Shown in pieces: positions 2,667 through 63,123 of a DNA stretch of 64,000 nt. Source of the DNA: Paramoeba atlantica (Eukaryota; Protista; Discosea); the NCBI GenBank assembly GCA_977017575.1, contig CDRNVI010000170.1, forward strand, positions 62,001 to 126,000. The letters run 5' to 3'. The translations under genes were made by a program, and so were the position numbers. The number at the start of each line of letters is the position of its first letter. Position 1 is the stretch's first letter. The notes beneath the pieces were generated by a model. It made no database searches. It was given only the letters and a program-made list of their open reading frames with translations, and was not told where the DNA came from.

Positions 2667-2794
2667 ACCTGCAAATTTGTTTCTGAAAGGAGGTGTTGTT
2701 GATTTACCAAAACCAAAGAAAGGAGTGATTTATTGTGATGGTGGTGGTGATTCGATTCGATTTGTTTTCTTTATTTTCCTTTGAGGAATGAATC

Positions 2795-3330
2795 TATAGG
2801 GTGAGTGTGAACAGTGATGGGAATCTTTTTATTTGTGAAGATGATGATGATGGATTGAGTGTGAGAGATAAAGAAGGAAATGAGACAATTGAATATCAAC
2901 AAAACAATTGATTCAATTCAATTGGAATCTTATGATGGTTTCAATTGGATTGAATGATCTAATTCAGTGTTGTTCTTGATTGGTCTCAAGATTCTTTTCA
3001 GGTTGTAATCTTAAACAAAGAAGGAGATTTGGTCAAATCTTTTGGATCAAAAGGTTCTGAAGATGGTCAGTTTGATGAACCATGATGTGGTGTGGGTGTT
3101 GTGGGTGAAGAAGGTTGAATTATTGTTGCTGATACTTCCCATCATTGAATTCAAGTGTTTGTTTGATAATGATGGATCTTTTCTTCATTCTTTTGGTTCA
3201 GAACATTCTTCTGAAAGGTCAGTTTAACAATCCTTACAATGTTGGTGTTGATGGGGGGATGGGGATATTGTTGTTTCTGATGATGGGGAGGGTAGAATTA
3301 TTGTTTGTGATTCAGAAAATGTGTTTTTAG
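2795..3330 (+). pseudogene. NHL-repeat (beta-propeller) protein remnant
   Basis: Interrupted frames give GVSVNSDGNLFIC, GDLVKSFGSKGSEDGQFDEP, ADTSHH.IQVF and DNDGSFLHSFGS..GQFNNPYNVGVD, which are typical NHL repeats. Stops and frameshifts are present. Confidence 0.7.
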
Positions 3331-3551
3331 AAAGAAAGAACATTACTTTTTTCGTTTGGTGATTTTCACATAAACAAACCTCATTTTTGGGGTTGTTGTT
3401 GATTCATTTTGGATCAATTATTATTTCAGATTTTAAGAAGAATTTAAAATTGAATTGTGGAACTGATTTGGAAGAGAGGACAGGATTTTTATTATTCTTT
3501 TTCATTTTCTTCCTTTTTATTTTCTCTTCTTCAAGAGGGTTTTTGTTTTTT

Positions 3552-3565
3552 TGATTTTTTTGATT
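3552..3565. repeat. Target-site duplication (left) of CRE-like copy 1, TGATTTTTTTGATT
   Basis: An identical 14-mer lies at 6151-6164. Boundaries are slightly ambiguous because they adjoin the poly(T). Confidence 0.75.
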
Positions 3566-6150
3566 TTTTTTTTTTTTTTTTTTTTTTTTGGAGATGAAAG
3601 AGATTTTTATTCGAAAAAGATGGTCGTAAGAGAAGGGAATGGTTGCACATTTGGCAGAATATCTCACCCAGTGAGAGGAGGAACTGCAGAAAAAGGGGGT
3701 AGTACGTGTGGAAAAGAAGAGGGGGGAATGGAAATGTCATTTAGATTGAGAGATGATGAGAAGCACAGAGAATGATGGGTCAAAAGGGGGTTGCTGGGTT
3801 TTAGATTTTCCCGTATGCTCATCATGTGGTTTGCCATTGCTTTCATTAGTGCAGCTGAAATCTTCTTCTTTGCTGTTCTCAAGAAGAGGGGGAGGGGGTT
3901 GGCATCCAGGACCCGGTCGTTTTGGAGGGCAATTGAAGCGAGGGACCGTAGGAGTGCACTAATGTCAGGGGATATTCCACCACCTGAGGATGAAGATGCT
4001 GGAAGGAAGATGACTTCACCTTGGCGATCGGAAAGAGTTATTTGTTTAAGGGTCCGTTTCTCCTCAGGGGTGTCTCTGTCCCTTCCTGCATTAAAGTCTG
4101 TTTCAGTCAGACGTCTGTCCACATATTCTCTGCGTTTTATGATCCTGGCATGGTGTGCAGGTGAGAGGGTGTCGAGTGTGGGGTCAGAGTAGGTTTTGGT
4201 GGGTGTTTGGATCACACAACGAAAGCGGGGGGTTATGTGGGTTGACACAACTCGAACATCAATACACAGATCCTGGTCGCCTTGCCACTCACAGATTGTA
4301 AGATCAGGTTGCTTGTGTGACTTCCCAATTGGCTGGTAGGCTCCGTCTCGGATTGTTGTTTTTCCTGCCCAGTTGGCAATGTTCTTGAGTTCTTTCACGG
4401 AGAGCATGGTGTCTTCTCGGGTTCCTCTTCCACGACTGGTGCAGTCTGAGAGGTGGAGGGAGGATGCAGCACAGAGTTCTTTTTCACAAAATCCACACTT
4501 GACAGTCCCAAGTTCACAGAGAGCCCCAAGGTGTGGGTCAATGATGTCAAGCCTACATCGGTAGGCTGAGCGAAAATCTTCAGCATTTAAGGCTCGATAT
4601 GGCTTTGGCTCAGAGGTGTCCTTGTCTGGGTAGGCTGTCATCCACAAGTGGGTGGTGGGGCCAACCTCATTCTCACGGATTGCACAGCAGAGGTTTTTAT
4701 CTTGTGTTGGGTCCATGATCTTCTTTTTGACATCCTGAAGTTCACAGGAGGTGAACTTCTTCTGTGGTTTGTAGTTTTCTCCAGTGCCCATTGAGTCAGA
4801 TGGTGGCTCTGTCAATCGAGTTAGGAGCTCATGGACAGAGGTACCACTTGGCAGTTTCCACTCGCTCAAGATGAAGCTTTCAAAATGGTCATATGCTTGG
4901 TGGAGAGCCTGGCACTGGGGTGAGTCACTCTTCCAGAAGTCTTCAAAGAGGTTGATAAGTTCAGGTTTGAACTCAGAGCAGGATCAGTAAACTGAGATCC
5001 AGGAGCCAAGGAAGGCTGCTTGGTGGGTGTTCTGAGAGTAGCTCAAGCCACCACCACCTTTTGACTTTGGAAGGCCTGCAGCTTCTACTTGAGAGAGATG
5101 GAGTTCTTTGTTTGGATGCAGGTGGGGGACTTGGAGGAGGTTGAGGAGGTAATTGATGTTTGTTGTAGTGGTTTGCTTGATGAAGTCTTGGAAAGGGGTT
5201 AAAGAGAGAGGTGTTGTGCGACAGATGTATGTTAGTTTGGGTGTGATGGTTTTGACAAAAAGCTCAAGACTTTCATGGGGGTTGGAGAACATTATTAAAC
5301 AGTGGTCTTGCGATGCTTGTTGGTATTCTTGAGCAAGGGTATGAAGCCGCTTGGAAATTTGAGTGTTCGGCCCAATGGGTGACCCTAGAACTGTGATTAC
5401 TTCCGCCTTCCCAATGCCAAGATTTTTGAGGTCATTGCTCCTGGGCGCTTCGGGAGAGAAACAGACCATTTTGCCCCTTTCTGTGCCAAGTTTGAGGTTG
5501 GCATTTGGGAGGACACTCTGGATCTGAGTGGTGATTTCTGCAATGGCAACCAGGCTCCCACAAACAAATATATCATCAACAAAGAGGAGAAGAAGAAGTG
5601 CATTCAGTGGAGCATCAACCTTCTGAAAGATTGGATTAAGGACTCCATGAAATCCCAGACAGAAGAAAATTGTCCCGAGGGGATCTCCTTGCTGGACACC
5701 CTCCTCCATGGTGAGGGTGTGGTTCCGGTCATGAGAGAGGAGGGGTGTTGCTGAAGAATAGAAGGTGTAGAGGTATGGAAGTAATACAGGGGCCAGCTGG
5801 ACTGTGCTCTCAAAGATGGTTTTTCTTGAGATGGAATTGAAGGCATTAACAATGTCCAGTTTCGCGGCATAATGTTGTGGGTGGAGGTGGAGATAGGCTG
5901 TGATATTGCTTTGTGGACCATTTCTGCACCACTTGGCAAGCATACACCATATTGGTGGGACAATTTCTCAGGAATTCCCTCGTGTTGGACTTCAAGAACA
6001 AGTGCAATCACTGCCCACCTCTTGAGAACTTCAGCAACACCAATTGGACGGATCCCTTTGTCCCCTTTTGCCAGAGGAATGAAGAGAGAGGTTGCCATGA
6101 TGTTGTGTATGGTTTCATTGAGTCTTTGGTTGGTGATTAAGACTGTCAAT
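3566..6150 (-). mobile_element. CRE-clade non-LTR retrotransposon, 5'-truncated copy 1
   Basis: Poly(A) tail (poly-T 3564-3589) with AATAAA just upstream. RT motifs RPIGVAEVLKR, QYGV..GAEMVH, KLDIVNAFNSISR, GVQQGDPLG and FVDD are followed by CGFC..H..C and KQPDL...CIDV (RLE endonuclease). A 14-bp TSD is present. Homology to copy 2 ends at gtcaatt (~6151). Confidence 0.9.
3664..6149 (-). pseudogene. RT-zinc knuckle-RLE ORF of copy 1 (frameshift ~5900, premature TGA at 4984)
   Basis: ORF pieces 5604-6149, 4984-5943 and 3664-4869. Copy 2 has CGA where this copy has TGA. Confidence 0.85.
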
Positions 6151-6164
6151 TGATTTTTTTGATT
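6151..6164. repeat. Target-site duplication (right) of CRE-like copy 1
   Basis: TGATTTTTTTGATT, identical to 3552-3565. Confidence 0.75.
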
Positions 6165-6211: not shown

Positions 6212-6283
6212 TCCCCGATAGTATAGTTGGCAAAATCCCCGCCTGTCACGCGGGAGTCCCGGGTTCGATTCCCGGTCGGGGAG
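6212..6283 (+). tRNA. tRNA-Asp: tRNA-Asp(GUC)
   Basis: Acceptor TCCCCGA/TCGGGGA, anticodon arm CCCGC-CTGTCAC-GCGGG, T-loop GTTCGATT. Confidence 0.88.
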
Positions 6284-7061
6284 GATTTTTTTCTCTTTCT
6301 TTTTATTTTTATTTTTTTTTGTTCAAAAAGATCAAGTGATATGGTTTTTTCTTTTTTTCCTTTTTCTTTTTTTCTCTCCTCTTCTCTTTTTTTTCTATTT
6401 TTATTTTTTGATTCTTTCTCCTTTTTTCTGATTTCTTTGAACTCACATAATGAAAAGGGTCTCTGTTTTGCAAACTCCAATGTGTGTGACTCTATTTGTT
6501 GTGAAGGAAGTTAAATTTTGATCATAGTTCAACTTCAATTGGTTTCTTCTGTTGGAAAGTGAACAATCACCATATATTCACCCTTGACAACAATCATTCT
6601 CTTGCCAACAAAAAATTGAAATTTCGTTTCCAGATCAAAAGTTGTTTCCTCTCAATGAGTTGTTTCAAAAATTTTGGTCCATTCTCCAATCTCTTTTTCA
6701 TGAACATCAATCTCAAAACTACTTTGTTGTGCAATGGAGGAGGGAGGGCCTTTCAGTTTTTGGAGAAAGTTTTTTATCCCTTTTCTGTTTCTTTCCAAGC
6801 AATTTGTTCCCATCCCCCCCAAAAAAAGTTTTTTTTTTTCTGAGACAGAGTCAGCTAAATTTATTCAGCTCACAAATAAAATTTTAAAGAAATGTCTTCG
6901 GGGAATTTCTCCCCCCCCCCCCCCCAAAAAAAAAGAGAAAAACAGAGAAAACCAAATTTTTCCAAAATGAATTTGAGTGTCACACAAACAAACTTCAATT
7001 GGAGCAAAAGAGTGTTTGAGGAAACTTTTTTCTTTTTTCTTTTGAAAATTAAAAAAAAAAA

Positions 7062-7125
7062 GCCACTAAAGGGGCTTGAACCCTTGACCACTAGGTTAAA
7101 AGCCTAGTGCTCGAGCTATAGTGGC
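7062..7125 (-). pseudogene. tRNA-Lys(UUU) with deleted D-loop
   Basis: Reverse complement GCCACTATAGCTC^GAGCACTAGGCTTTTAACCTAGTGGTCAAGGGTTCAAGCCCCTTTAGTGGC. The D-stem halves are directly fused; the other arms pair. Confidence 0.8.
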
Positions 7126-7324
7126 ATTTGTTGAAAAAAAGGTCAAATTTTTAGTGTGATGGGGGCTGATTTTGATGGAAGAAGGAAAAAGAAGAAAAAG
7201 ATCGGCAAACAAGGAAAAAAAAAAGATTTTTAATTCCTTCTTGAGCAAAACAACAAAGACAAAAGAAAACCCATTCAGTCAGCGAGATTTATCTTTTTTT
7301 CAACTTTTTTTTCAAAAAAAAAAT

Positions 7325-7397
7325 TGCTCATTACAGGGATCGAACCTGTGACCTCCGCGTTATTAGCACGGCGCTCTACCGACTAAGCTAAACGAGC
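7325..7397 (-). tRNA. tRNA-Ile: tRNA-Ile(AAU)
   Basis: Reverse complement GCTCGTTTAGCTTAGTCGGTAGAGCGCCGTGCTAATAACGCGGAGGTCACAGGTTCGATCCCTGTAATGAGCA forms a full cloverleaf. Confidence 0.9.
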
Positions 7398-7653
7398 ATT
7401 TCTGAAAAATGACCCAATTTTTTGGCTTTCCAGCCAGAAAAATTTCTGGAGAAACAGAAAAACAAAGTGAAAAAACAAAGAAAAGAGCAGAAAAAGGAAA
7501 AAAACAAAAATGAAAAAAGTGATTGGAGAAAATGAAGGTGAAAATCACTTTTTATTGTTAATTGACTCCATTTTTTTTTCTTTTTCAAGGGAAGGGAAAA
7601 CCTTTTCAAAAGTAAAATCGAATGATTTTTTTTCATTCAAAAAAAAATAATAG

Positions 7654-7836
7654 ATGTTAATCACGTGTGAGAAAAATGGACTTTAATCGTCGAGGGTGCT
7701 TTTTGCCTCGAGACTTGGATTCTGACGTCGAGGTCCATCAACTTGTTGATGGACAGAGACCCAAAGAATCCAAGTCGAGAAAGGAAAAAAGCACCAGAGA
7801 CTTGATTGACCATTTTTCTCACACGTGATTCAACAT
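7654..7836 (+). other. 183-nt imperfect palindrome/foldback with periodic G·A internal loops
   Basis: Paired blocks: 7659-7679/7810-7830 (21 bp), 7695-7704/7786-7795, 7712-7723/7765-7776 and 7733-7742/7745-7754. The apex is C-TT-G. Confidence 0.9.
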
Positions 7837-7861
7837 TTAATCATCTTTTCCATGCTGCAAA
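7836..7861 (+). repeat. Left inverted repeat flanking the tyrosine recombinase gene
   Basis: TTTAATCATCTTTTCCATGCTGCAAA matches the reverse complement of 9197-9222 at 25/26 positions. Confidence 0.85.
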
Positions 7862-7953
7862 GGAATTTTCAAAAAAAAGTTTTCTTGGAAATTAATCATT
7901 CATGTTGGTTGTCACAATTATTTGATTTTCTTTTCATTTTCATTTTTTCAAAA

Positions 7954-9081
7954 ATGGCGCAACACCAAATGTCAACTCGAGAGGAAAGACGAAGGAGGGT
8001 TGAAAACGGGGTCCCTGACCATGCAAAAGCCCTGACTGTTGACAACTGTGGGTTTGATCGATCTCGTAGGGCTGTTGAAGACTTTTTCGATCGACGAACC
8101 CCAGCACCAACAAGACGAGCAGTTCTCCATGCGGGTGCGCGTTTCGAAAACTTTCTTCAGCTGAAGACAGATGCTGGGTTGGATTATTCAATTAACGAAA
8201 AACTTTTAATTGAGTTTTTTGAGTCGTATCTCTGGTATTTGATCCACCCCCGAACACACGTGTGTGTCTTTGACTGTGGATCTTTTTTTCCAATCGTTGC
8301 ATACACAAAACGGTTCATCTACCTAAAATACGCGGTTGACCTTGGGCCGTGTCGTGAACTCAACAGACTCTTGAAAAAGGAAACCTTTGGGCACCAACCA
8401 ATGAAAAAGGAAATCTTCACTCTTGAGGAGTTGACCAAGTTTGTGGAACGGAAACCGCAAGATGGAGGAGAAAGACAAGAGTCCCTTTTGGTGCTGTGTT
8501 CCTTTTTTGGTTTGGGACGATCTGCTGAGGTCATCATGATGACGAAAGAAACTGTTTTGGTGAAAAGCGATTCTGTTGTTTTTTCTCTTTTCCGTTGTGC
8601 GAAGTCAAGGACCTTTCGAACCACAAAAGTTGTTGTCCCAAATGTTGGAAAGTTCGATACCGCTCGTGAATTTGCTGCCCACCTGGCTTCAATTCCTGAC
8701 AAACCTCGTTTGTGGTGGACCTGGAGACAAGGGAAGTTTGTTGAGCAACCAATGGGGAAGAACCAAATCACAGTGATTGCAAAGAAGGTTGCACTCTTTC
8801 TGCAGAAAGATCCTCCACTGTATGCTTCACACTCTTTCCGCCGATCCGGGGCTACAGCAATGGTTGAAGGGGGAGCCTCCACTGATCAACTGATGGTGTC
8901 TGGGGCTTGGGCTTCCCAACGTGTTGCACATGGTTATATTCAAGATTCTGACCGAGCTGCCAGAGAAAGAACAGAGATCTTGACTTCAACTTCTTCAAGT
9001 TCTCAATCGAGCTCATCTTCTGGGGTTCAACTGACCATTAATTTGGGAGATCTTGTCTCTCGAGAGAGGTTGGGTCATTAA
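7954..9081 (+). CDS. Tyrosine recombinase (phage-integrase fold), 375 aa
   Basis: Intact ORF from ATG 7954 with the catalytic set GLGRSAE (R), AKS (K), HSFRR (HxxR), GAW (W) and HGYI (Y). Confidence 0.9.
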   Translation: MAQHQMSTREERRRRVENGVPDHAKALTVDNCGFDRSRRAVEDFFDRRTPAPTRRAVLHAGARFENFLQLKTDAGLDYSINEKLLIEFFESYLWYLIHPRTHVCVFDCGSFFPIVAYTKRFIYLKYAVDLGPCRELNRLLKKETFGHQPMKKEIFTLEELTKFVERKPQDGGERQESLLVLCSFFGLGRSAEVIMMTKETVLVKSDSVVFSLFRCAKSRTFRTTKVVVPNVGKFDTAREFAAHLASIPDKPRLWWTWRQGKFVEQPMGKNQITVIAKKVALFLQKDPPLYASHSFRRSGATAMVEGGASTDQLMVSGAWASQRVAHGYIQDSDRAARERTEILTSTSSSSQSSSSSGVQLTINLGDLVSRERLGH

Positions 9082-9196
9082 TGTTAATGAGCAATGTCAA
9101 CAATAAATACTGATAATGTCTTGAAATTCAATTATTTTTCATAATTGCAAGGGAACAAAAGACCATTTATTTCTGAATTTGGGCAAACTCAGTGAG

Positions 9197-9222
9197 TTTG
9201 CTGCATGGAAAAGATGATTAAA
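9197..9222 (-). repeat. Right inverted repeat flanking the tyrosine recombinase gene
   Basis: TTTGCTGCATGGAAAAGATGATTAAA. It overlaps a small perfect palindrome GCAAACTCA-G-TGAGTTTGC at 9183-9201. Confidence 0.85.
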
Positions 9223-9290
9223 GAAAAAATTGTTTTCAGGCAAAAAAAAAAAGAGGAAAAAATTCAAAAACAAAACAAAGAAAAAAAATT

Positions 9291-9374
9291 CGTCGGAAGC
9301 AGGATTTGAACCTACGCCCCGTTTCCAGGATGTGATTTCTAGTCACACGTCTTAGACCACTCGACCATTCCGAC
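9291..9374 (-). tRNA. tRNA-Ser: tRNA-Ser(AGA)
   Basis: Reverse complement GTCGGAA..TGTGA-CTAGAAA-TCACA, long variable arm, GTAGGTTCAAATCCTGC, TTCCGACG. Confidence 0.9.
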
Positions 9375-9379
9375 ATTTC

Positions 9380-43518: not shown

Positions 43519-43553
<35 letters not shown>

Positions 43554-46500
43554 CAATGAAAGAGATTTTTATTCGAAATAGATGGTCGTAAGAGAAGGGA
43601 ATGGTTCTCACCCAGTGAGAGGAGGAACTGCAGAAAAAGGGGGTAGTACATGTGGAAAGAAGAGGGGGGAATGGAAATGTCATTTGGATTGAGAGATGAT
43701 GAGAAGCACAGAGAGTGATGGGTCAAAAGGGGGTTGCTGGGTTTTAGATTTTCCTGTATGCTCATCATGTGGTTTGCCATTGCTTTCATTAGTGCAGCTG
43801 AAATCTTCTTCTTTGCTGTTCTTAAGAAGAGGGGGAGGGGGTTGGCATCCAGGACCTGGTTGTTTTGGAGGGCAATTGAGGTGAGGGATCGTAGGAGTGC
43901 ACTAATGTCAGGGGATATTCCACCACCTGAGGATGAAGATGCTGGAAGGAAGATGACTTCACCTTGGAGAAACGGAAAGAGTTATTTGTTTAAGGGTCTG
44001 TTTCTCCTCAGGGGTGTCTCTGCCCCTTCCTGCATTAAAGTCTGTTTCAGTCAGACATCTGTCCACATATTCTCTGCATTTCATGATCCTGGCATGGTGT
44101 GCAGCAGGTGAGAGGGTGTCGAGTATGGGGGGTCAGAGTGGGTTTTGGTGGGTGTTTGGATCACACAGCGAAAGTGGGGGGTTTTGTGGGTTGACACAAC
44201 TCGGACATCAATACACAGATCCTGGTCACCTTGCCACTCGCAGATTGTAAGATCAGGTTGCTTGTGTGACTTCCCGATTGGCCGGTAGGCTCCATCTCAG
44301 ATTGTTGTTTTTCCCGCCCAGCTGGCAATGTTCTTGAGTTCATCACGGAGAGCATGGTGTCTTCTTGTGTGGTTCCTCTTCCACGACTGGTGCAATCTGA
44401 GAGGTGGAGGGAGGATGCAGCACAGAGTTCTTTTTCACAGAATCCACACTTGACAGTCCCAAGTTCGCAGAGAGCCCCAAGGTGTGGGTCAACTATGTCA
44501 AGCCTACATCGGTAGGCTGAGCGAAAATCTTCAGCATTTAAGGCTTGATATGGCTTTGGCCCAGAGGTGTCCTTGTCTGGGTAGGCTGTCATCCACAAGT
44601 GGGTGGTGGGGCCAACCTCATTCTCACAGATTGCACGGCAGAGGTTTTTGTCTTGTGTTGGGTCCATGATCTTCTTTTTGACATCCTGAAGTTCACAGGA
44701 GGTGAACTTCTTCTGTGGTTTGTAGTTTTCTCCAGTGCCCATTGAGTCAGATGGTGGCTCTGTCAATCGAGTTAGGAGCTCATGGACAGAGGTACCACTT
44801 GGCAGTTTCCACTCGCTCAAGACGAAGCTTTCAAAATGGTCATATGCTTGGTGGAGAGCCTGGTGCTGGGGTGAGTCACTCTTCCAGAAGTCTTCAAAGA
44901 GGTTGATAAGTTCAGGTTTGAACTCAGAGCAGGATCGGTAGACTGAGATCCAGGAGCCAAGGAAGGCTGCTTGGTGGGTGTTCTGAGAGTAGCTCAAGCC
45001 ACCACCACCTTTTGACTTTGGAAGGCCTGCAGCTTCTACTCGAGAGAGATGGAGTTCTTTGTTTGGATGCAGGTGGGGGACTTGGAGGGGGTTGAGGAGG
45101 TAATTGATGTTTGTTGTAGTGGTTTGCTTGATGAAGTCTTGGAAAGGGGTTAAAGAGAGAGGTGTTGTGTGACAGATGTATGTTAGTTTGGGTGTGATGG
45201 TTTTAACAAAAAGCTCGAGACTTTCATGGGGGTTGGAGAACATTATTAAACAGTGGTCTTGTGATGCTTGTTGGTATTCTTGAGCAAGGGTGTGAAGCCA
45301 CTTGGAAATTTGAGTGTTCAGCCCAATGGGTGACCCTAGAACTGTGATTACTTCCGCCTTCCCAATGCCAAGATTTTTGAGGTCATTGCTCCTGGGCGCT
45401 TCAGGAGAGAAACAGACCATTTTGCCCCTTTCTGTGCCAAGTTTGAGGTTGGCATTTGGGAGGACACTCTGGATCTGAGTGGTGATTTCTGCAATGGCAA
45501 CCAGGCTCCCACAAACAAATATATCATCGACAAAGAAGAGAAGAAGAAGTGCATTCAGTGGAGCATCAACCTTCTGAAAGATTGGATTGAGGATTCCATG
45601 AAATCCCAGACAAAAGAAAATTGTCCCGAGGGGATCTCCTTGCTGGACACCCTCCTCCATGGTGAGGGTGTGGTTCCGGTCATGAGAGAGTGAGGGGTGT
45701 TACCGAAGAATAGAAGGTGTAGAGGTATGGAAGTAATACAGGGGCCAGCTGGACTGTGCTCTCAAAGATGGTTTTTCTTGAGATGGAATTGAAGGCATTA
45801 ACAATGTCCAGTTTCGCGGCATAATGTTGTGGGTGGAGGTGGAGATAGGCTGTGATATTGCTTTGTGGACCATTTCTGCACCACTTGGCAAGCATACACC
45901 ATACTGATGGGACAATTTCTCAGGAATTCCCTCGTGTTGGACTTCAAGAACAAGTGCAATCGCTGCCCACCTCTTGAGAACTTCAGCAACACCAATTGGA
46001 CGGATCCCTTTGTCCCCTTTTGCCAGAGGAATGAAGAGAGAGGTTGCCATGATGTTGTGTATGGTTTCATTGAGTTTTTGATTGGTGATTAAGACAGTCA
46101 ATTCTTTGAGGGTTGAGTGGAGTTCTCGGTCTGTGCATAGGAGTGTGACAAACTCATAAGACGTGCGGCCTTTTGGAAGTCTCTGAAGGGCCAGATCAAG
46201 TGAGTCAAAGGACTGAAACTCATCTTGTTCAAGGATTGCTGGTTTCCAGTCAGGAATTTCGGCTCGATCTGGTGGAGTCCACGCCTGCTCAGATCTTGGG
46301 TAGAGGTTCTTCACAGTTTCACGATTTTCTGGGACTGAGAGATCCCTGAATCCACTCTTGGATTGAAGCTTCCTTGCAGCTTTGGAGAGATGTCCTTTTC
46401 TGACCTCTTCAATAATCTGGTCTGCCTTGGTTTTCTTGGTGGACTTCTGCCTCCTCTTTTGCTTGAGTTTGCTGAGCTCACCCTCAAGTTTTTTGTGGAG

Positions 46501-50682: not shown

Positions 50683-53600
50683 TTTTTTTAATATTAATTT
50701 TTTTGTAATTTCAATTTCTTAATTATGTTTCCATATTGAATAAAATGTTTTTATTTATTTTTTAATTTTATGATATGTTTTAAATTTATTTTTCATTTTA
50801 AAAATATTTTTTAAGTTGGTTCAATCAAATTTCTTAATTGTTTTGAATTGATGTATTTGATTTATTTTTTATTTTCTTTTTTTTACATTAATTTTTTGTA
50901 ATTTCAATTTCTTAATTATGTCTCCATATTGAATGCAATTCCTTAATTTATTTTCTGATTCTGTGATATTTTTTGAATTTATGTTTCAGATCTATGATAT
51001 TTTTTAAGTTGGTTCAATCAAATTTCTTAATTGTTTTGAATTGATGTATTTGATTTATTTTTTATTTTCTTTTTTTTACATTAATTTTTTGTAATTTCAA
51101 TTTCTTAATTATGTCTCCATATTGAATGCAATTCCTTAATTTATTTTCTGATTCTGTGATATTTTTTGAATTTATGTTTCAGATCTATGATATTTTTTAA
51201 GTTGGTTCAATCAAATTTCTTAATTGTTTTGAATTGATGTATTTGATTTATTTTTTATTTTCTTTTTTTTACATTAATTTTTTGTAATTTCAATTTCTTA
51301 ATTATGTCTCCATATTGAATGCAATTCCTTAATTTATTTTCTGATTCTGTGATATTTTTTGAATTTATGTTTCAGATCTATGATATTTTTTAAGTTGGTT
51401 CAATCAAATTTCTTAATTGTTTTGAATTGATGTATTTGATTTATTTTTTATTTTCTTTTTTTTACATTAATTTTTTGTAATTTCAATTTCTTAATTATGT
51501 CTCCATATTGAATGCAATTCCTTAATTTATTTTCTGATTCTGTGATATTTTTTGAATTTATGTTTCAGATCTATGATATTTTTTAAGTTGGTTCAATCAA
51601 ATTTCTTAATTGTTTTGAATTGATGTATTTGATTTATTTTTTATTTTCTTTTTTTTACATTAATTTTTTGTAATTTCAATTTCTTAATTATGTCTCCATA
51701 TTGAATGCAATTCCTTAATTTATTTTCTGATTCTGTGATATTTTTTGAATTTATGTTTCAGATCTATGATATTTTTTAAGTTGGTTCAATCAAATTTCTT
51801 AATTGTTTTGAATTGATGTATTTGATTTATTTTTTATTTTCTTTTTTTTACATTAATTTTTTGTAATTTCAATTTCTTAATTATGTCTCCATATTGAATG
51901 CAATTCCTTAATTTATTTTCTGATTCTGTGATATTTTTTGAATTTATGTTTCAGATCTATGATATTTTTTAAGTTGGTTCAATCAAATTTCTTAATTGTT
52001 TTGAATTGATGTATTTGATTTATTTTTTATTTTCTTTTTTTTACATTAATTTTTTGTAATTTCAATTTCTTAATTATGTCTCCATATTGAATGCAATTCC
52101 TTAATTTATTTTCTGATTCTGTGATATTTTTTGAATTTATGTTTCAGATCTATGATATTTTTTAAGTTGGTTCAATCAAATTTCTTAATTGTTTTGAATT
52201 GATGTATTTGATTTATTTTTTATTTTCTTTTTTTTACATTAATTTTTTGTAATTTCAATTTCTTAATTATGTCTCCATATTGAATGCAATTCCTTAATTT
52301 ATTTTCTGATTCTGTGATATTTTTTGAATTTATGTTTCAGATCTATGATATTTTTTAAGTTGGTTCAATCAAATTTCTTAATTGTTTTGAATTGATGTAT
52401 TTGATTTATTTTTTATTTTCTTTTTTTTACATTAATTTTTTGTAATTTCAATTTCTTAATTATGTCTCCATATTGAATGCAATTCCTTAATTTATTTTCT
52501 GATTCTGTGATATTTTTTGAATTTATGTTTCAGATCTATGATATTTTTTAAGTTGGTTCAATCAAATTTCTTAATTGTTTTGAATTGATGTATTTGATTT
52601 ATTTTTTATTTTCTTTTTTTTACATTAATTTTTTGTAATTTCAATTTCTTAATTATGTCTCCATATTGAATGCAATTCCTTAATTTATTTTCTGATTCTG
52701 TGATATTTTTTGAATTTATGTTTCAGATCTATGATATTTTTTAAGTTGGTTCAATCAAATTTCTTAATTGTTTTGAATTGATGTATTTGATTTATTTTTT
52801 ATTTTCTTTTTTTTACATTAATTTTTTGTAATTTCAATTTCTTAATTATGTCTCCATATTGAATGCAATTCCTTAATTTATTTTCTGATTCTGTGATATT
52901 TTTTGAATTTATGTTTCAGATCTATGATATTTTTTAAGTTGGTTCAATCAAATTTCTTAATTGTTTTGAATTGATGTATTTGATTTATTTTTTATTTTCT
53001 TTTTTTTACATTAATTTTTTGTAATTTCAATTTCTTAATTATGTCTCCATATTGAATGCAATTCCTTAATTTATTTTCTGATTCTGTGATATTTTTTGAA
53101 TTTATGTTTCAGATCTATGATATTTTTTAAGTTGGTTCAATCAAATTTCTTAATTGTTTTGAATTGATGTATTTGATTTATTTTTTATTTTCTTTTTTTT
53201 ACATTAATTTTTTGTAATTTCAATTTCTTAATTATGTCTCCATATTGAATGCAATTCCTTAATTTATTTTCTGATTCTGTGATATTTTTTGAATTTATGT
53301 TTCAGATCTATGATATTTTTTAAGTTGGTTCAATCAAATTTCTTAATTGTTTTGAATTGATGTATTTGATTTATTTTTTATTTTCTTTTTTTTACATTAA
53401 TTTTTTGTAATTTCAATTTCTTAATTATGTCTCCATATTGAATGCAATTCCTTAATTTATTTTCTGATTCTGTGATATTTTTTGAATTTATGTTTCAGAT
53501 CTATGATATTTTTTAAGTTGGTTCAATCAAATTTCTTAATTGTTTTGAATTGATGTATTTGATTTATTTTTTATTTTCTTTTTTTTACATTAATTTTTTG

Positions 53601-54358
53601 TAATTTCAATTTCTTAATTATGTCTCCATATTGAATGCAATTCCTTAATTTATTTTCTGATTCTGTGATATTTTTTGAATTTATGTTTCAGATCTATGAT
53701 ATTTTTTAAGTTGGTTCAATCAAATTTCTTAATTGTTTTGAATTGATGTATTTGATTTATTTTTTATTTTCTTTTTTTTACATTAATTTTTTGTAATTTC
53801 AATTTCTTAATTATGTCTCCATATTGAATGCAATTCCTTAATTTATTTTCTGATTCTGTGATATTTTTTGAATTTATGTTTCAGATCTATGATATTTTTT
53901 AAGTTGGTTCAATCAAATTTCTTAATTGTTTTGAATTGATGTATTTGATTTATTTTTTATTTTCTTTTTTTTACATTAATTTTTTGTAATTTCAATTTCT
54001 TAATTATGTCTCCATATTGAATGCAATTCCTTAATTTATTTTCTGATTCTGTGATATTTTTTGAATTTATGTTTCAGATCTATGATATTTTTTAAGTTGG
54101 TTCAATCAAATTTCTTAATTGTTTTGAATTGATGTATTTGATTTATTTTTTATTTTCTTTTTTTTACATTAATTTTTTGTAATTTCAATTTCTTAATTAT
54201 GTCTCCATATTGAATGCAATTCCTTAATTTATTTTCTGATTCTGTGATATTTTTTGAATTTATGTTTCAGATCTATGATATTTTTTAAGTTGGTTCAATC
54301 AAATTTCTTAATTGTTTTGAATTGATGTATTTGATTTATTTTTTATTTTCTTTTTTTA
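50683..54358. repeat. 193-bp AT-rich tandem satellite, ~19 copies
   Basis: GTCTCCATATTG recurs at 50920, 51113, 51306, 51499 ... 54008, 54201 (period 193). The first copy (~50727) is diverged. There is one AGATCT site per unit. Confidence 0.97.
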
Positions 54359-55699
54359 TCAAAAAATTTTTTCTCTTTTTTGAATATTTAAAATCTTATT
54401 TTTTTAAAAAATATAAAAATCAAATTGAGAAAAATATTTTTTTTTAGCCAAATAAAGAAAATTAATTTTATTTCTGAAATTAATTTTAGTTTTTTGTTTG
54501 TTTTTGTTGGTTTTTGTTTCATTGCTTCATTTCACCTAAATTCATATACAAGAATCTATTATTTTCTTTCACAAAAAAAAAAAAAAATCTTTTGTCCTTT
54601 TTGTTGAAGTAATTTCATTGTAAAATTTAAAACTTCTAGTTCATGAATACATTTTTTTTTATAAAACCTTTGAATAAGAAAAGTTAACTCTTTGTTAAAC
54701 TTTAATAAAGTAATATTATTATTTTTATAAAAAATTAATTCTTAATAATCCAAATAAAAAAGAATAAATAATAACTTTCACAACTATAAGTTGTTTTTTT
54801 CAAATTGACTAACAACAAAACAGAAAACTTTCCAAAACTTGGGGTAACCTGCTTTTTGGAGTGAAATCAAAGATGTGAAAACACTTTACAAAGATTAAAT
54901 CTTTTCAAATTGATAAAATTGTTAAATATGTGTAAAAATGTAATGGAAACCAAGTTTCATTAATCCAAACCACTCTTAAGGATTGAATTAATACCACTTT
55001 CTTAAAAGCAATTTCTTTCACTTAGATTTATTTTTTTGTTTAAAGTGAAAAACAACTTTTTCTTATTGATTCAGAGCCACTTGAGGCAGAGAGGTGTAAT
55101 TTGTTTGAAGAAAAGCTGAAACAAAATATAAAAGAATTACAAAAAAAGATTGATGCTGCTCACTTTTAATTAATCATGAATATGAATAAAACTGATTTTG
55201 ATTGTAAAAAAGATACTGAAAAACTCAAAGTTGTTTTAATACATAATTGCTTCCATATATATTGTTCCTCTTGAAATAAATTCTATATCACTTTAATGCT
55301 TATAGTTGGTATTATTGGATAGAGTTTTTCAATTTTTACAATTATTAAAACAATATCCTTTGTTTCAAACTTAAAGGTGATGTATAATCTCTCAGTGAAT
55401 GAATGGTGTCATGTAATATTATTTTCATCACTAAATATCAATAATAAGTTATTTTCTTATTGAATTGATAAAATTTTTGTTCTAAAAGTGATTATAAAAT
55501 GTTGATTTTTAAAGTTCAAAGATAATGTCAAAGCTTTTCTTATCTTAAATAGTTGTTTTGCTTATAGTGTTGCAAACCTTCAAGCCTTAACTTGTAATTT
55601 CACAAAGTAATTCATTTAAAACATAATTTTTTCTAGTATGGGTTTTAAACACTGCCTTGGTAAGAATTATACAATCTCCAACAATTATAATCTCTTTTA

Positions 55700-59522: not shown

Positions 59523-62500
59523 CTACCCACGAGCAGCCTTAGGGAGATTCTTCTTAATTCTTCTTCCCGTACTCGAAAACCTCTCTGGTTCTTCTTCTTC
59601 TGATTCTTCTTCTTTCTCTTCCTCTTTCTTCTTTCTTGGTTCCTTCTTCTCTTGTTTCTTGTCTTTCTTTTTCCAATAATCTTCAATCACCTTGTATGAG
59701 TGGAAGGAACTCACAGCTTCCCACGACTCCTCCGCATTTTTCCACTTCACTAAATATTCTTGTCCATCCTCACCCATCCGATCGTCAACCACTTTTAAAA
59801 TCTCCAGTATTTTCCCTTCTCCTTCCTCCAAATCTCCTTGGATCTCTTTTAATCTCACTGCAGGTACTTCATTTTTCACCAAGGCGCATGTTGCATCAAT
59901 CAAATCGTATCCTTTTGTTGCCTGATTGTACCCCACCACTTTGAATGGTCCTTCCCAGCGCTGATCACTCTTCGCACCTCTTACATCTACCATCTTCATA
60001 ACCTCGGTTCCTGCCTCCCAAATTTTCTCTTTCTTGGCCTTATTTTTCCTCTCTGAATATTTCCTTCCTGCTTCCTTGGAATGTCCAAAAATGGCTGGAT
60101 ACACCGCATCGATCATCTTCTTATTTCGTTCAATTAAATCTTCTTCTGACACTTCTTGTAACTCTATACTCTGATAATCCTCGAACTTGTTCAACTTCCT
60201 TGCAAACATCAAGGCAAATGGACTCGACATATGTCTCCCCACAATCCGATCATTTAAGGACATTTGGACCACTGGCAACATTTTCGCCCAATTCTCCTGG
60301 TAGCCTTTCAGCAGCTTGAACAATAATCGTTTTGTTTCTCCCACATAGCGTTCTGCTGCTCCATTCTGGTTTGGGAAATAAGTCAAAACGGCTCTTGCCA
60401 CAAACTCAGCTGCCTTGCGGAACTCTTCTACAACATCATTCAAAAAGGAAGGGTCATTGTCCATTTGCAACACCTTGGGGATTCCAAAGTTAGTGAAAAT
60501 ATTCAATAGAACCCATGCTACTTGCACCGCTTCTTTTGACACTAGGGGTCGTAAAAGCACAAACTGCGTAGCCACATCAATCACTAATAGGATTACAGTG
60601 AAGCCATCTGAAGATACTTTCAAAATAATCAGATCCATTGCAATGTGATCAAACGGAAGTTTCGACAAAACTGGGGTGATGGGGTGAAATCCCACTTTCC
60701 CAACATTGTACATCAAACATTCTAGGCACCCTTTCGCTACTTTGTCACACAGGGTCCTCAATCCATCCCAATAAAATCCGTCTCTCACCATAGCTTCAAA
60801 TAGCCCGAGTCCTCCAATATGACTCTCTTTGTGTTTCGCTTTTATCAAGGCCAGTTTGTCTTCTTCTGCAGGTTCCTTCTTTCCCAAAATATCTTTCATC
60901 AACTTTTTCATTTTTTTTCCAATCCCTGTGGAAGGGACCTCATCTACCACCAGCTCATGTGAATCAAAAACACACTTAACTCCCGCCATATCTCTAACTG
61001 GTTCCCCAAAAATCCGAGAGAGAGAGTCAGGTAACACATGGTTCATTCCCTTGCAATGTATCACATAGAAATCGAAATTCAACAGGAAGTGCAGCCAATC
61101 TAAGATCATAAAGTTCTTCGATTGGTTCAAATACTCCAATGCTTTATGATCCGTCTCAATACAAAACCTCCTCCCCAACAGCAGGTGCCTCCACCTTTTG
61201 AGAGCGAATATGATTGCCAAGAGTTCTCGCTTTACCGCTGGGTAGTTCTTTTGGCCACCTTTCAATGAACCACCCCCAAAATCAATATATTTAATCTTTC
61301 CTTCGATTTTCTGATACAAAACAACTCCAATCCCAAACTGGGAAGCGTCCGTCGCAACTCGAAATTCTTCATCAAAATTTGGCTGGCTCAATGGTGGTGC
61401 TGACTCAAGCAATATCTTTAAATCTTGAAAGGCTTTCTGACAATCTGGCTTCCAATCTTTCTCTGTGATCACCTTCTTCTTTCTGAGCTCCTCAAGAGGT
61501 GCAGCAACCCTCGCATAGTTAGGGATGAAGTCTCTGAAGAAATTGAAAAAACCCAAGATTGCAGAAACCTTCTTTCCTGACGTTGGTCTAGTTATCTTCT
61601 TCAACCACCCCAACTTGTCTTTGGCCACCCATCGAGTTTCACCATCAACAATCATCCCCATAAACCAAATTCTTGTAAATCCAAACTTGCTCTTCTTCAA
61701 ATTCAGCTTGAATCCTGCCTTAGTCAGAGTTTCAATCACAACTTTCAGATGGTCAATGTGGTCTTCCACAGACTGTGAATGGGCCAACAGATTGTCCACA
61801 TAGGCTCTCAAGAAATCGAGGAAATCCGCCACCAATGAATCAATCACCCACTGAAAGTGTGTTGCTGCTCCTTTTGGACCAAAAGGCATCACCACCCATA
61901 CATACTGTTTCCCATCAGGCCCTGTAAAACCCAAGATTACTTGCGAGTCCTTCGAGAGTTTGATTTGGTGGAATGCTGCTGACAAGTCCAACTCAGAGAA
62001 AATTTTCGAACCTCTGATCCGAAAAATCAAATCAGCAATCGTAGGGAGCTGGTAGTCTGGGGCTTCTGATTTCGCATTCACCCCTCTCAGGTCCATACAA
62101 AGCCGAATATCATCTTCCTTCTTGCCACCTGAAACCTTGGGAGCTGCTACTAGAGGGGTGTTCCAGAGATTTCGCACTGAGGACACATCCTCCAGAGGAA
62201 CTATCCACCCTTTTTCCAACCATTCAGTAACTCTCTGTTGAACTTTGCCACTTAATCTTTCTGGAATCGGGTACTGTCGCGTAAAAACCGGCTTTGGATC
62301 GAGCAATGAAATCGAAAAATGCGAATTCCTGATATTACAACAAGTCCCATCAGGCAATCTCTGATTCTCTTCAAGAACTTCTTTAATCCCTCCCATTATT
62401 TTCTCAACTTCATTCTCAGGCAGGCGTGTCTCTTCAGATGGCCCACTCCATCCCTCTTTGTCCGCTAAGTTAGTCTCATGGAACAACTTCTTCCTTTCTG

Positions 62501-62555: not shown

Positions 62556-63123
62556 TCAAAAGTACTCGATCTTTCCCTAAACCAGGTAAAGTCCAAATCA
62601 AAATCTCAGCTTGGCCTTGGATTGTTGAAACTTTGACTTTCTTTGCTGTGTCTGTTTCTTGAACACATCCAGAAATTCCTCGGACTCGAAAATTTCTCTT
62701 CACTAAATCTCCTTCTAAACGGTCAAAAACAGAAGGGTCAGCGAGTGTTGCACTTGCTCCTGAGTCAAAGATCGCCCACACTTCCACATCATTCCTCCCA
62801 AGAGAGATTGGAATCTTGGGGAGCCCATCCGTATCTTCTTCCACCCCCAAACCAAAAAATCCTTCTTCAGTTAAAGCTAAATAAGCTTCCTCATCCTCAA
62901 AATCAGATGTTGAAACATCAGTTCCAGGGACCCCCAGGTTTGATTCCTCTTCGGCAAGTCCAGCCAACCTCGGTTCAGCTTTCTTTTTTGGACACCCATT
63001 TGCATAGTGACCCTTTTCCCGACAAGAGAAACATCTTATCTTGGCCAAATCGCGTCCTCTCCTCTCTTGAGGCTCATCTCTGCGCAATTGCTGCCATGGA
63101 CCTTTACCTTCTGCTCCACCCCC
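62527..63123 (-). CDS. pro: Second CCHC knuckle plus aspartic protease (in frame with gag after a single TGA)
   Basis: CFSCREKGHYANGC and AIFDSGAS. The frame is open from the gag TGA. Confidence 0.85.
   Translation of the reverse strand, partial: GGGAEGKGPWQQLRRDEPQERRGRDLAKIRCFSCREKGHYANGCPKKKAEPRLAGLAEEESNLGVPGTDVSTSDFEDEEAYLALTEEGFFGLGVEEDTDGLPKIPISLGRNDVEVWAIFDSGASATLADPSVFDRLEGDLVKRNFRVRGISGCVQETDTAKKVKVSTIQGQAEILIWTLPGLGKDRVLLSAADGATWC

What the first reader, a model, noticed from the sequence alone, without database searches (positions are those of the whole stretch)
7654..7836. Foldback with three evenly spaced, all-G·A internal loops
Seen: folding the + strand gives GTC-GAG-GGTGC / GCACC-AGA-GAC, TC-GA-GAC / GTC-GA-GA and GTC-GAG-GTCC / GGAC-AGA-GAC. 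These are 3x3, 2x2 and 3x3 loops in which every opposition is G·A. They start at 7692, 7710 and 7730 (18-20 nt apart, roughly two helical turns), with a C-TT-G apex. Known: tandem sheared G·A pairs in a CGAG/CGAG context and C(TT)G mini-loops are stable in DNA hairpins. Inference: repeating the same mismatch motif is unlikely in a randomly decaying palindrome. It implies strand-specific selection for a structure with repeated protein-binding sites (ssDNA or cruciform substrate, origin, or structured RNA). Alternative: a TA-flanked MITE, since TA occurs at 7651-7652 and 7838-7839.
Basis: partly seen in the sequence, partly recalled or inferred. Interest (0 to 1): 0.8.

Follow-up and report, generated by a model that had tools for sequence, protein, structure and literature searches.

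The report
Recombinase transposon's hairpin with G·A loops
The foldback is real: it is the conserved end-piece of a small, apparently undescribed family of mobile elements in protists that encode only a Cre-like recombinase, and its three purine-purine (G·A) loops are kept on one strand across distant relatives, which points to a DNA or RNA hairpin that works in folded form.

Summary
Observation confirmed. Window 7654-7836 folds into a 183-nt hairpin (z about -11.6).

It is not a stray palindrome or a MITE. It is the left end of a 1.58-kb element (about 7646-9222). That element has two 99.5% copies elsewhere in the same assembly, with different flanks. Its only gene is an intact Cre-like tyrosine recombinase (YR, 7954-9081). 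A 26-nt inverted repeat brackets the gene.

The layout foldback + inverted repeat + YR + inverted repeat recurs in at least six diverged lineages from five or more samples (YR identity down to about 28%). In them:
- the stems covary;
- the loops stay at three sites 18-22 nt apart;
- the loops stay purine-purine, on the YR-sense strand.

The ancestral loop is a 2x2 "CGAG block". The window's 3x3 loops are a lineage-specific enlargement of it.

G·T outnumbers A·C 17 to 2, which also marks the sense strand as the folded one.

The right arm plus the adjacent inverted repeat is an inverted near-copy of the two ends joined. This is DIRS-ICR-like geometry in an element without reverse transcriptase.

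Function is inferred, not shown. Most likely it is a folded cis-acting site that gives the recombinase strand or orientation choice. I rate it a new variant of a known kind.

The parts
7646..9222 (+). Whole mobile element, about 1.58 kb (bounds good to a few nt)
   Evidence: 99.5% identity to L002 3678-5254 and to L005, with unrelated flanks beyond these points.
7654..7836 (+). Foldback: left arm 7654-7742, apex TT 7743-7744, right arm 7745-7836
   Evidence: Homologous foldbacks occur in L003, L006, L007, L008, L009, L010 and L012.
7692..7694 (+). Loop site 1: GAG opposite AGA 7796-7798 (3x3, all G·A). An incomplete CGAG block, CGAG 7691-7694 against AGAG 7796-7799.
   Evidence: The same site carries purine-purine loops in L007, L008, L010 and L003; in L009 the loop there is mixed and partly decayed.
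7709..7712 (+). Loop site 2: CGAG opposite CGAG 7776-7779, a full CGAG block (C:G, G·A, A·G, G:C).
   Evidence: 2x2 GA/GA in L006, L010 and L009, 2x3 GA/GAG in L008, and 3x3 GAG/AGA in L007.
7730..7732 (+). Loop site 3: GAG opposite AGA 7755-7757 (3x3, all G·A).
   Evidence: 2x2 GA/GA in L006, L008, L010 and L012a.
7717..7723 (+). GGATTCT stem paired with AGAATCC 7765-7771. The GGATTC/GAATCC core is invariant in seven of the eight foldbacks; the seventh base varies in L009.
7805..7861 (+). ICR-like stretch: the end of the right arm plus IR-L. It is an inverted near-copy of the right end joined to the left end.
   Evidence: 54 of 67 positions identical against a shuffled maximum of 43. The same holds in L003, L006, L009 and L010.
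7836..7861 (+). IR-L, the 26-nt inverted repeat that abuts the foldback
   Evidence: 96% complementary to 9197-9222.
7954..9081 (+). Intact tyrosine recombinase gene, 375 aa plus stop
9183..9201 (.). Small 19-nt palindrome just inside the right end
   Evidence: Also present in L002, L005 and L001.
9197..9222 (+). IR-R, the right terminus of the element

Best explanation
The foldback is the conserved cis-acting left-end module of a small mobile element whose only gene is a Cre-like tyrosine recombinase.

Shown:
- It moves with the YR gene as one unit.
- It has co-diverged with that gene through at least six lineages.
- Its stems covary.
- Three phased sites keep purine-purine loops, ancestrally CGAG against CGAG. 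These loops always lie on the YR-sense strand.
- Its right arm together with the neighbouring inverted repeat mirrors the two element ends joined together.

Inferred:
- The module works in folded form, as a hairpin on the sense strand or as one side of a cruciform.
- There the CGAG blocks form stable tandem sheared G·A pairs. The complementary strand can offer only C·T/T·C mismatches.
- That makes the two strands, and so the two orientations of an otherwise near-symmetric site, distinguishable.
- I propose the recombinase or a partner reads this asymmetry to set the polarity of recombination at the adjacent core-like site. That site has 7-8 bp inverted arms around a 6-bp spacer once the ends are joined.
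- The fold would also place the left end next to the internal copy of the right end.
For: - Unit of mobility: window 7646-9221 matches L002 and L005 at 99.5% with different flanks.
- Shared architecture: foldback + IR + YR + IR in W, L003, L006, L009 and L010; foldback upstream of the YR in L008 and L012.
- Co-divergence: foldback identity 80, 73, 62, 56, 54% follows YR identity.
- Covariation: three pair types occur at the positions next to the invariant GGATTC/GAATCC anchor, and each lineage keeps 56-71 Watson-Crick pairs.
- Loop content over eight foldbacks: A·G 42, A·A 11, G·G 3 against C·T 2, T·T 7, C·C 0. CGAG occurs 31 times on the sense strand and 3 times on the other.
- Independent strand marker: G·T 17 against A·C 2.
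- Energy: the sense strand folds better in 6 of 8 foldbacks with DNA parameters. With RNA parameters it is -101.3 against -93.4 kcal/mol.
- Site spacing is 18-22 nt throughout.
- Joined ends against the internal copy: 46-55 of 67-69 positions identical, shuffled maximum 40-43.
- A chimeric junction in L007 joins a family-B right end to a family-A foldback arm exactly at that internal site.
- The YR has its catalytic residues and models as Cre-like: pLDDT 87.7, TM 0.63/0.72.
- Literature: CGAG blocks form thermally stable DNA hairpins with sheared G·A pairs (PMC10085684). The unpaired features of attC set strand choice for an integron YR (PMC5027507).
Against: - No experiment or expression data bears on folding, binding or recombination.
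- No source of single-stranded DNA is known for a YR-only eukaryotic element.
- The DNA energy difference between strands is small (about 2-6 kcal/mol), and the parameter set may not credit G·A blocks.
- In family B, site 1 can pair fully after a register shift.
- L012 carries a second foldback with pyrimidine loops.
- L004 has the inverted repeats but no foldback. The intact family-B gene in L007 sits beside a truncated foldback. The module may therefore not be needed for everything.
- In the distant relative L011 the hairpin lies inside the inverted repeat and lacks CGAG.
- The lineages are few and partly related, so the counts are not independent events.
Confidence: 0.45

Rival explanations
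1. The folded molecule is RNA. The foldback would be transcribed with, or just ahead of, the YR message. It would act as a structured leader: a regulator of YR expression, a protein-binding RNA or a small-RNA source. The tandem G·A loops would then be RNA motifs.
For: The purine loops and G·T wobbles lie on the YR-sense strand in every scorable copy, and the foldback lies 100-250 nt upstream of the start codon. With RNA parameters the sense strand is favoured by 8 kcal/mol. Family members are transcribed: there are MMETSP and EukProt transcript entries. In the distant relative L011 a hairpin still sits upstream of the YR although the end geometry differs.
Against: A hairpin of about -100 kcal/mol in a 5' leader would block ribosome scanning. 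A 1.6-kb element has no room for a promoter upstream of its own left end. No Rfam family matches. The loops are symmetric, so they are not kink-turns. The GAA triloop apex of families B and D is a motif I know as typical of stable DNA hairpins (my knowledge).
Confidence: 0.2
2. The loops are a by-product of six duplex binding sites (core YNGAGR) kept in direct orientation about two helical turns apart. This would be an iteron or arm-site array for the recombinase's N-terminal domain or a host protein, embedded in a symmetric set of other sites. No folding would be needed.
For: The same motif reads in the same direction on both arms with an 18-22 nt phase. The GGATTC/GAATCC and T-run/A-run stems are conserved in sequence as well as in pairing.
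Against: It does not explain why non-conserved stem positions covary. It does not explain why G·T is tolerated and A·C is not. Variant sites (CAGAG, TAGAG, CTGAG) depart from the motif yet keep purine opposite purine. The shared core is only about four to five informative positions.
Confidence: 0.1
3. The pattern is neutral. The arms would be homogenised by repair of hairpin or cruciform heteroduplex, and only mismatches that repair handles poorly (stacked tandem G·A) would survive. On this view the loops are old scars, not signals.
For: The arms are almost perfectly complementary within each lineage yet 20-50% diverged between lineages. New G·A oppositions have been added independently: C to A at three right-arm sites in W and L007, and extra single G·A mismatches in L010.
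Against: The three sites, their phase and the closing C:G pairs have been held through YR divergence down to about 28% identity. On the other strand the same positions are C·T/T·C mismatches, which should be repairable. The CpG-decayed copy L003 shows what neutral decay looks like here: CGAG becomes CAAG or CGAA at five sites.
Confidence: 0.12
4. This is the reader's alternative: an independent TA-flanked foldback MITE that happens to lie beside a YR gene.
For: TA occurs at both sides. The size and hairpin form are MITE-like.
Against: The foldback and the YR gene are copied together as one unit. Seven foldback-YR pairs come from five or more samples, with matching divergence. No solo copy occurs in 138 kb. 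The left TA is part of a TAG kept at the left end in all families.
Confidence: 0.03

Closest known systems
Crypton DNA transposons (eukaryotic YR-only elements)
   Same: A tyrosine recombinase is the only enzyme. The element is small, has no reverse transcriptase, and occurs in several copies with different flanks. A circular intermediate is the usual model for Cryptons (PMC3212892).
   Different: Cryptons are described as lacking terminal inverted repeats and as having only 4-6 bp terminal direct repeats (PMC3212892, PMC13465315). This element has a 183-nt terminal foldback and 26-81 nt inverted repeats. Its YR shows none of the Crypton-linked domains in Pfam, only a weak PF00589 hit.
DIRS retrotransposons: inverted terminal repeats plus internal complementary region (ICR)
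   Same: [quoted passage not shown] That is how the DIRS-1 ICR is defined (PMC7192593). Both encode a YR.
   Different: There is no gag, RT, RNase H or methyltransferase, and the element is 1.6 kb rather than about 5 kb. The favoured folded strand is the sense strand, not the antisense cDNA strand of the DIRS model. The internal copy lies near the left end and forms one arm of a long hairpin.
Integron attC sites and the CTX-phage attP hairpin (YR substrates used as folded single strands)
   Same: Both are imperfect palindromes whose conserved unpaired features, rather than their sequence, mark one strand for a tyrosine recombinase (PMC5027507).
   Different: Those systems are bacterial. attC is 60-140 nt with extrahelical bases and an unpaired central spacer. 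Here the marks are symmetric purine-purine loops. The YR model is closest to Cre; the integron integrase ranks 46th. Use as a single strand is not shown here.
CGAG block (DNA structural motif)
   Same: Two antiparallel CGAG tetranucleotides give C:G, sheared G·A, A·G, G:C. NMR has shown them in thermally stable DNA hairpins (PMC10085684). Window site 2 and most sites in L006, L008 and L010 have exactly this sequence arrangement.
   Different: The published case is a run of consecutive blocks in a human promoter region. Here single blocks are spaced two helical turns apart inside ordinary Watson-Crick stems, in a mobile element.
Yeast 2-micron plasmid FLP/FRT and the mismatched bubbles of parvovirus terminal hairpins
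   Same: Once its ends are joined, the element would carry two inverted core-like sites, as the 2-micron circle does. Conserved asymmetric bubbles in a terminal hairpin give polarity in parvoviruses. Both comparisons come from my own knowledge and are leads only.
   Different: No inversion isomers are seen: seven of seven complete copies have the same orientation. Parvoviruses use a different class of nuclease and are linear single-stranded genomes. No viral relative of the YR was found.

Membership tests
Crypton | Tyrosine recombinase as the only enzyme; no reverse transcriptase inside the element | tested here: met
   The one long sense-strand ORF inside 7646-9222 is the YR, with the catalytic residues R, K, HxxR, W/H and Y. 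The RT at 3664-5943 belongs to a separate repeat.
Crypton | No terminal inverted repeats; short 4-6 bp direct repeats at the termini | tested here: not met
   A 183-nt terminal foldback and a 26-nt inverted repeat are present. No consistent terminal direct repeat is seen in five insertions.
Crypton | YR groups with a named Crypton clade or carries its accessory domains (GCR1_C, DUF3504 and similar) | tested here: inconclusive
   Pfam finds only PF00589 in 34 of 35 relatives. One relative is a firefly hypothetical protein. No phylogeny against named Cryptons could be made, because no reference sequences were available.
DIRS-like retrotransposon | RT and RNase H (often also a methyltransferase) together with the YR | tested here: not met
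   None lies within the element.
DIRS-like retrotransposon | [quoted passage not shown] | tested here: met
   46-55 of 67-69 positions identical in five element families or copies, against a shuffled maximum of 40-43.
MITE / foldback transposon | Non-autonomous, many solo copies, TA target duplication, unlinked to the coding element | tested here: not met
   It is always adjacent to a YR gene and no solo copy occurs in 138 kb. The whole genome could not be searched.
attC-like folded recombination site | Imperfect palindrome with conserved unpaired features confined to one strand | tested here: met
attC-like folded recombination site | Recombined as a folded single strand by its YR | not testable with these tools
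   This needs biochemical or in vivo structural data.
CGAG block | Antiparallel CGAG/CGAG giving C:G, G·A, A·G, G:C | tested here: met
   By sequence at 7709-7712 against 7776-7779, and in L006, L008 and L010. The sheared geometry itself cannot be tested here.
FLP/FRT-type invertible segment | Both orientations of the segment between the inverted sites occur among copies | tested here: not met
   Seven of seven complete copies have the same orientation. The reversed arrangement in L007 is a chimera of two families.
Kink-turn RNA | Three-nucleotide bulge followed by tandem G·A pairs | tested here: not met
   The loops are symmetric, 2x2 or 3x3. No Rfam hit.
Telomere resolvase (hairpin-forming YR relative) | Resolvase-type fold acting at the centre of a palindrome | tested here: not met
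   The model is a two-domain Cre-like fold. The palindrome centre is not conserved and is deleted in L007.

The most novel reading that the evidence does not exclude
A eukaryotic tyrosine-recombinase element may use a folded single strand as its recombination or end-joining substrate. Phased CGAG blocks of sheared G·A pairs would serve as the strand-selective marks. That would be a eukaryotic counterpart of integron attC or CTX-phage hairpin recombination, combined with DIRS-like end-splinting and no reverse transcription.
Probability: 0.22. Interest if true: 0.9.

Novelty: new variant of a known kind. Interest (0 to 1): 0.72.

Why it matters
- Eukaryotic YR-only transposons (Cryptons) are described as having no terminal repeats, and their mechanism is essentially unstudied. 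This family is compact and widely scattered, yet has an elaborate, conserved terminal structure. It therefore offers defined cis-sites to work with.
- The strand-specific conservation of non-canonical G·A pairs is unusually clean comparative evidence that a nucleic-acid fold, not only a duplex sequence, is under selection in a eukaryotic DNA element.
- If the folded strand is the substrate, structure-specific YR recombination, so far known from bacterial integrons and filamentous phages, would extend to eukaryotes.
- It would also link the logic of the DIRS internal complementary region to DNA-only elements.
- Even on the modest reading, it gives annotators a recognisable signature for a family that current transposon classifications appear to lack.

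Tried and rejected
- **DNA pattern scans.** A pattern built from the conserved left arm found nothing in the JGI metagenome or viral collections. The contig behind L008 is evidently not in that collection.
- **Protein scans.** Protein-pattern scans of the same two collections also found no relative.
- **Alignment folding.** RNAalifold on a MAFFT alignment of all eight foldbacks predicted no pairs, because the distant arms were misaligned. I replaced it with per-sequence folds and an anchor-based pair table.
- **My own scripts.** An ungapped palindrome finder and a sliding-window fold failed or timed out.
- **Known RNA families.** Rfam gave only a sub-threshold miRNA hit.
- **tRNA targeting.** The window copy lies between tRNA-Ile and tRNA-Ser, but none of the 12 other loci has a tRNA gene. 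Rejected.
- **Link to the neighbouring RT.** That RT is a separate, 5'-truncated non-LTR-like repeat. Rejected.
- **Other readings.** Kink-turn, telomere resolvase, invertible switch and DIRS-type cDNA folding were each considered and rejected. The reasons are in the membership table and full report.
- **Sample identifiers.** No paper mentions any of them. The host remains "the organism of transcriptome MMETSP0151".

Full report
**1. The observation**

Window 7654-7836 reads as the finder said.
- On the + strand, GAG 7692-7694, GA 7710-7711 and GAG 7730-7732 oppose AGA 7796-7798, GA 7777-7778 and AGA 7755-7757.
- The apex is TT at 7743-7744.
- Every opposition in these three loops is G·A.

As single-stranded DNA the region folds at -58.1 kcal/mol on the + strand and -56.3 on the - strand. 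Both have z about -11.6, and none of 200 shuffles does as well. The minimum-energy fold shows both 3x3 loops. It draws site 2 as a 3x5 loop, but CGAG 7709-7712 against CGAG 7776-7779 with a two-A bulge is an equivalent reading. Motif spacing is 18, 20 | 21, 20 nt.

**2. What the foldback belongs to**

The sequence is eukaryotic and AT-rich, with long purine tracts and several tRNA genes.

*The gene.* Just downstream of the foldback lies an intact ORF, 7954-9081, 375 aa.
- It has a weak Pfam Phage_integrase hit (20.9 bits, below the cut-off).
- It has the tyrosine-recombinase catalytic residues (alignment A2).
- An AlphaFold model (pLDDT 87.7) is a two-domain Cre-like fold. Best PDB matches are Cre at TM 0.63/0.72 and E about 1e-10, then XerH, XerA and Tn1549 Int; IntI ranks 46th.

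*The repeats and bounds.* A 26-nt inverted repeat brackets the gene: 7836-7861, touching the foldback, and 9197-9222. Two other contigs of one ENA assembly (ERZ24900291) carry 99.5% copies of window 7646-9221 with unrelated flanks (L002, L005). This fixes the element at about 1.58 kb: foldback, IR-L, YR, IR-R.

*The neighbouring RT.* The reverse transcriptase on the minus strand at 3664-5943 belongs to a different repeat (3555-6151 = 43519-46103, 95.9%). It ends in a T-run and looks like a 5'-truncated non-LTR element. It is not part of this element.

**3. Relatives**

*Searches.*
- The word-based protein search found only five clusters.
- The exhaustive profile search was justified because the family was still open. 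It found 2743 proteins at E <= 1e-3 and 18 at E <= 1e-30, mostly YR-only proteins of 270-450 aa.
- Pfam sees only PF00589 in 34 of 35 sampled relatives, with no RT and no Crypton-linked domain.

*Architecture in the twelve fetched loci* (self-comparison):
- L003 and L006 (family B, YR about 50% identical) have foldback + IR + YR + IR.
- L010 and L009 (family D, about 33%, from two other samples) have the same layout.
- L008 (family C, about 40%, a JGI sample) and L012 (family E, about 28%) have a foldback upstream of the YR.
- L007 holds a family-A-like foldback next to a family-B gene.
- L001 and L004 are degraded copies without a foldback.
- L011 (more distant) has the inverted repeats outermost and a different hairpin inside them.

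Foldback identity to the window falls in step with YR identity: 80, 73, 62, 56, 54%. The two parts have therefore diverged together. No solo foldback occurs in the 138 kb I hold, and none of the other loci has a tRNA gene.

**4. Are the loops conserved?**

Yes (folds).

| Lineage | Site 1 | Site 2 | Site 3 |
|---|---|---|---|
| W (A) | 3x3 GAG/AGA | 2x2 GA/GA | 3x3 GAG/AGA |
| L007 (A-like) | 2x2 GA/AA | 3x3 GAG/AGA | deleted |
| L006 (B) | pairs fully after a register shift | 2x2 GA/GA | 2x2 GA/GA |
| L008 (C) | AA/GA | GA/GAG | GA/GA |
| L010 (D) | 2x2 GA/GA | 2x2 GA/GA | 2x2 GA/GA |
| L012a (E) | not a purine block in the fold; CGAG on the sense strand of both arms | single G·A | GA/GA |

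- L010 also has single G·A mismatches beside its loops.
- L009 (D) has the same sites as L010, partly decayed.

The common unit is CGAG on the sense strand of both arms, which pairs with itself as C:G, G·A, A·G, G:C. NMR work calls exactly this a "CGAG block" and shows it forms thermally stable DNA hairpins with sheared G·A pairs (PMC10085684). The window's 3x3 loops arise because the right-arm C of the block is A at sites 1 and 3. The same change occurs at site 2 in L007. So the all-G·A 3x3 form is an enlargement seen in this lineage, not the ancestral state.

Counts over eight foldbacks on the YR-sense strand:
- Symmetric-loop oppositions: A·G 42, A·A 11, G·G 3, against C·T 2, T·T 7, C·C 0.
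- CGAG: 31 on the sense strand, 3 on the other.
- Site spacing is 18-22 nt in all lineages.

These counts include related copies, so they are not independent events.

**5. Is the pairing itself conserved?**

The GGATTC/GAATCC stem core (window 7717-7722 with 7766-7771) is invariant in seven lineages. The pairs just outside it change on both sides:
- TA, AT and CG at the first position;
- TA, CG and AT at the second position;
- and so on for five positions.

The outer stems have quite different sequences in families A, B, C and D, yet each lineage keeps 56-71 Watson-Crick pairs.

A second, independent strand marker is that G·T occurs 17 times and A·C twice. G·T is tolerated in a folded strand, and on the opposite strand it becomes A·C.

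The sense strand folds better in six of eight cases with DNA parameters. With RNA parameters it is better by 8 kcal/mol.

L003 shows what decay looks like here. It has 21 CpG against 61 in its 94%-identical sister L006, and five of its six CGAG sites have a G-to-A change, to CAAG or CGAA.

**6. End geometry**

If the right end is joined to the left end, the junction reads as 7-8 bp inverted arms around a 6-bp spacer, in both family A and family B. That is the usual shape of a YR core site (PMC3212892).

The stretch made of the end of the right foldback arm plus IR-L is the reverse complement of that junction, apart from three extra bases (TAG) at the left end:

| Element | Identical positions | Shuffled maximum |
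|---|---|---|
| W | 54 of 67 | 43 |
| L003 | 50 of 69 | 43 |
| L010 | 55 of 68 | 42 |
| L009 | 53 of 69 | 42 |

This is how the DIRS-1 internal complementary region is defined: outer ends repeated adjacent to each other internally (PMC7192593). Here it occurs in an element with no reverse transcriptase.

In L007 a family-B right end is fused to a family-A-like foldback arm exactly at this internal site, sharing the spacer. Recombination at that point would give this result. It is one rearranged locus, so I treat it as a hint only.

**7. Mechanism**

*Shown.* The foldback is a conserved cis-module of the element, with strand-specific non-canonical loops at three phased sites.

*Inferred.* It acts in folded form.
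- On the sense strand the CGAG blocks would be stable stacked G·A pairs.
- The other strand has only pyrimidine mismatches at those positions.
- This gives an otherwise near-symmetric site a polarity that the recombinase or a partner could read. Integron integrases read the unpaired features of attC in a similar way (PMC5027507).
- The fold also sets the left end beside the internal copy of the right end.
- I put this at about 0.45.

*Rivals.*
- An RNA leader or RNA motif (0.2). The strand is right, but a hairpin of this stability ahead of the ORF would hinder translation, and there is no room for a promoter upstream of it.
- A duplex array of direct binding sites (0.1). It does not explain the covariation or the G·T bias.
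- Repair-refractory scars in arms homogenised by repair (0.12).
- An independent MITE (0.03).

*Other readings set aside.*
- A DIRS-type cDNA fold is unlikely because the favoured strand is the sense strand.
- An invertible switch is unlikely because seven of seven complete copies share one orientation.
- A telomere resolvase is unlikely because the fold is Cre-like and the palindrome centre is not conserved.

**8. Comparison and novelty**

By content the element is Crypton-like: YR only. It fails the Crypton description of having no terminal inverted repeats (PMC3212892, PMC13465315). It meets the DIRS ICR geometry but lacks all the retro-element genes. I found no paper describing such an element, though the library is partial. 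I rate it a new variant of a known kind.

**9. State of the genes**

Counts only.

| Copy | Frame changes | In-frame stops |
|---|---|---|
| Window YR | 0 | 0 |
| L007 (family-B gene) | 0 | 0 |
| L002 | 1 | 0 |
| L005 | 2 | 0 |
| L001 | 1 | 5 (also lacks its start) |
| L004 | 1 | 3 |
| L003 | 0 | 1 |
| L006 | 1 | 1 |

**10. Host**

A neighbouring gene in L001 is identical to a protein of transcriptome MMETSP0151 in EukProt. One family-B YR cluster has an MMETSP transcript member. The host is therefore a marine microbial eukaryote. I could not verify which one; my recollection that this number belongs to an amoebozoan is unchecked.
Noticed in passing
window 3555-6151 and 43519-46103 (extending to about 48000): Two copies (95.9%) of a retroelement on the minus strand with an RVT_1 hit. 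The first ends in a long T-run at about 3540-3590 and stops about 60 nt from tRNA-Asp (6212-6283). It looks like a 5'-truncated non-LTR element placed head-to-head with a tRNA gene, as tRNA-targeting elements are in some amoebae (my knowledge).
   Followed up: partly
window 6212-9375, 15027-18483, 32224-32296: Seven tRNA genes were called. A tRNA-like stretch at about 7060-7130 was not called by ARAGORN and may be a pseudogene.
   Followed up: no
window 50683-54457: A 193-bp satellite, about 19.5 units at roughly 99% identity, with G+C of only 18-24%.
   Followed up: no
window 59523-63873 (minus strand): A Ty3/gypsy-type polyprotein (RT, RNase H, integrase core; 1010-aa ORF) with a zinc-knuckle gag ORF on its 5' side (higher coordinates, minus strand).
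   Followed up: partly
window 37039-37722: Three tandem units of 228 bp at about 92% identity, inside overlapping ORFs on both strands.
   Followed up: no
L007 1828-5479: A nest of elements. A family-A-like copy on the minus strand is interrupted just after its foldback by a family-B copy that lacks most of its own foldback. The join lies exactly at the internal core-like site. A third weak integrase ORF lies at 2787-3488.
   Followed up: partly
L012 243-362: A second foldback directly upstream of the main one, with TC/TC pyrimidine loops, that is, in the opposite orientation. No YR similarity was found in the 240 nt before it. Unexplained.
   Followed up: partly
L003 4652-6313 compared with L006 3650-5300: L003 has 21 CpG against 61 in its sister copy. 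Ten of the 11 foldback differences are transitions, most of them at CpG. This pattern suggests methylation-linked decay of silenced copies in this organism.
   Followed up: partly
L001 9188-10645: An amidohydrolase gene of the host whose next-best hits after one unnamed JGI protein (58%) are all cyanobacterial (about 50% identity). It may be an old transfer from the cyanobacterial lineage. It is identical to an MMETSP0151 transcript.
   Followed up: no
L011 44-2440: A distant relative in which 81-nt inverted repeats are the outermost feature. Inside the left repeat, a different repeat-rich hairpin without CGAG lies upstream of the YR.
   Followed up: partly
window 9183-9201; L002, L005, L001: A 19-nt palindrome just inside the right terminal repeat is kept in all family-A copies. 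Its role is unknown.
   Followed up: no
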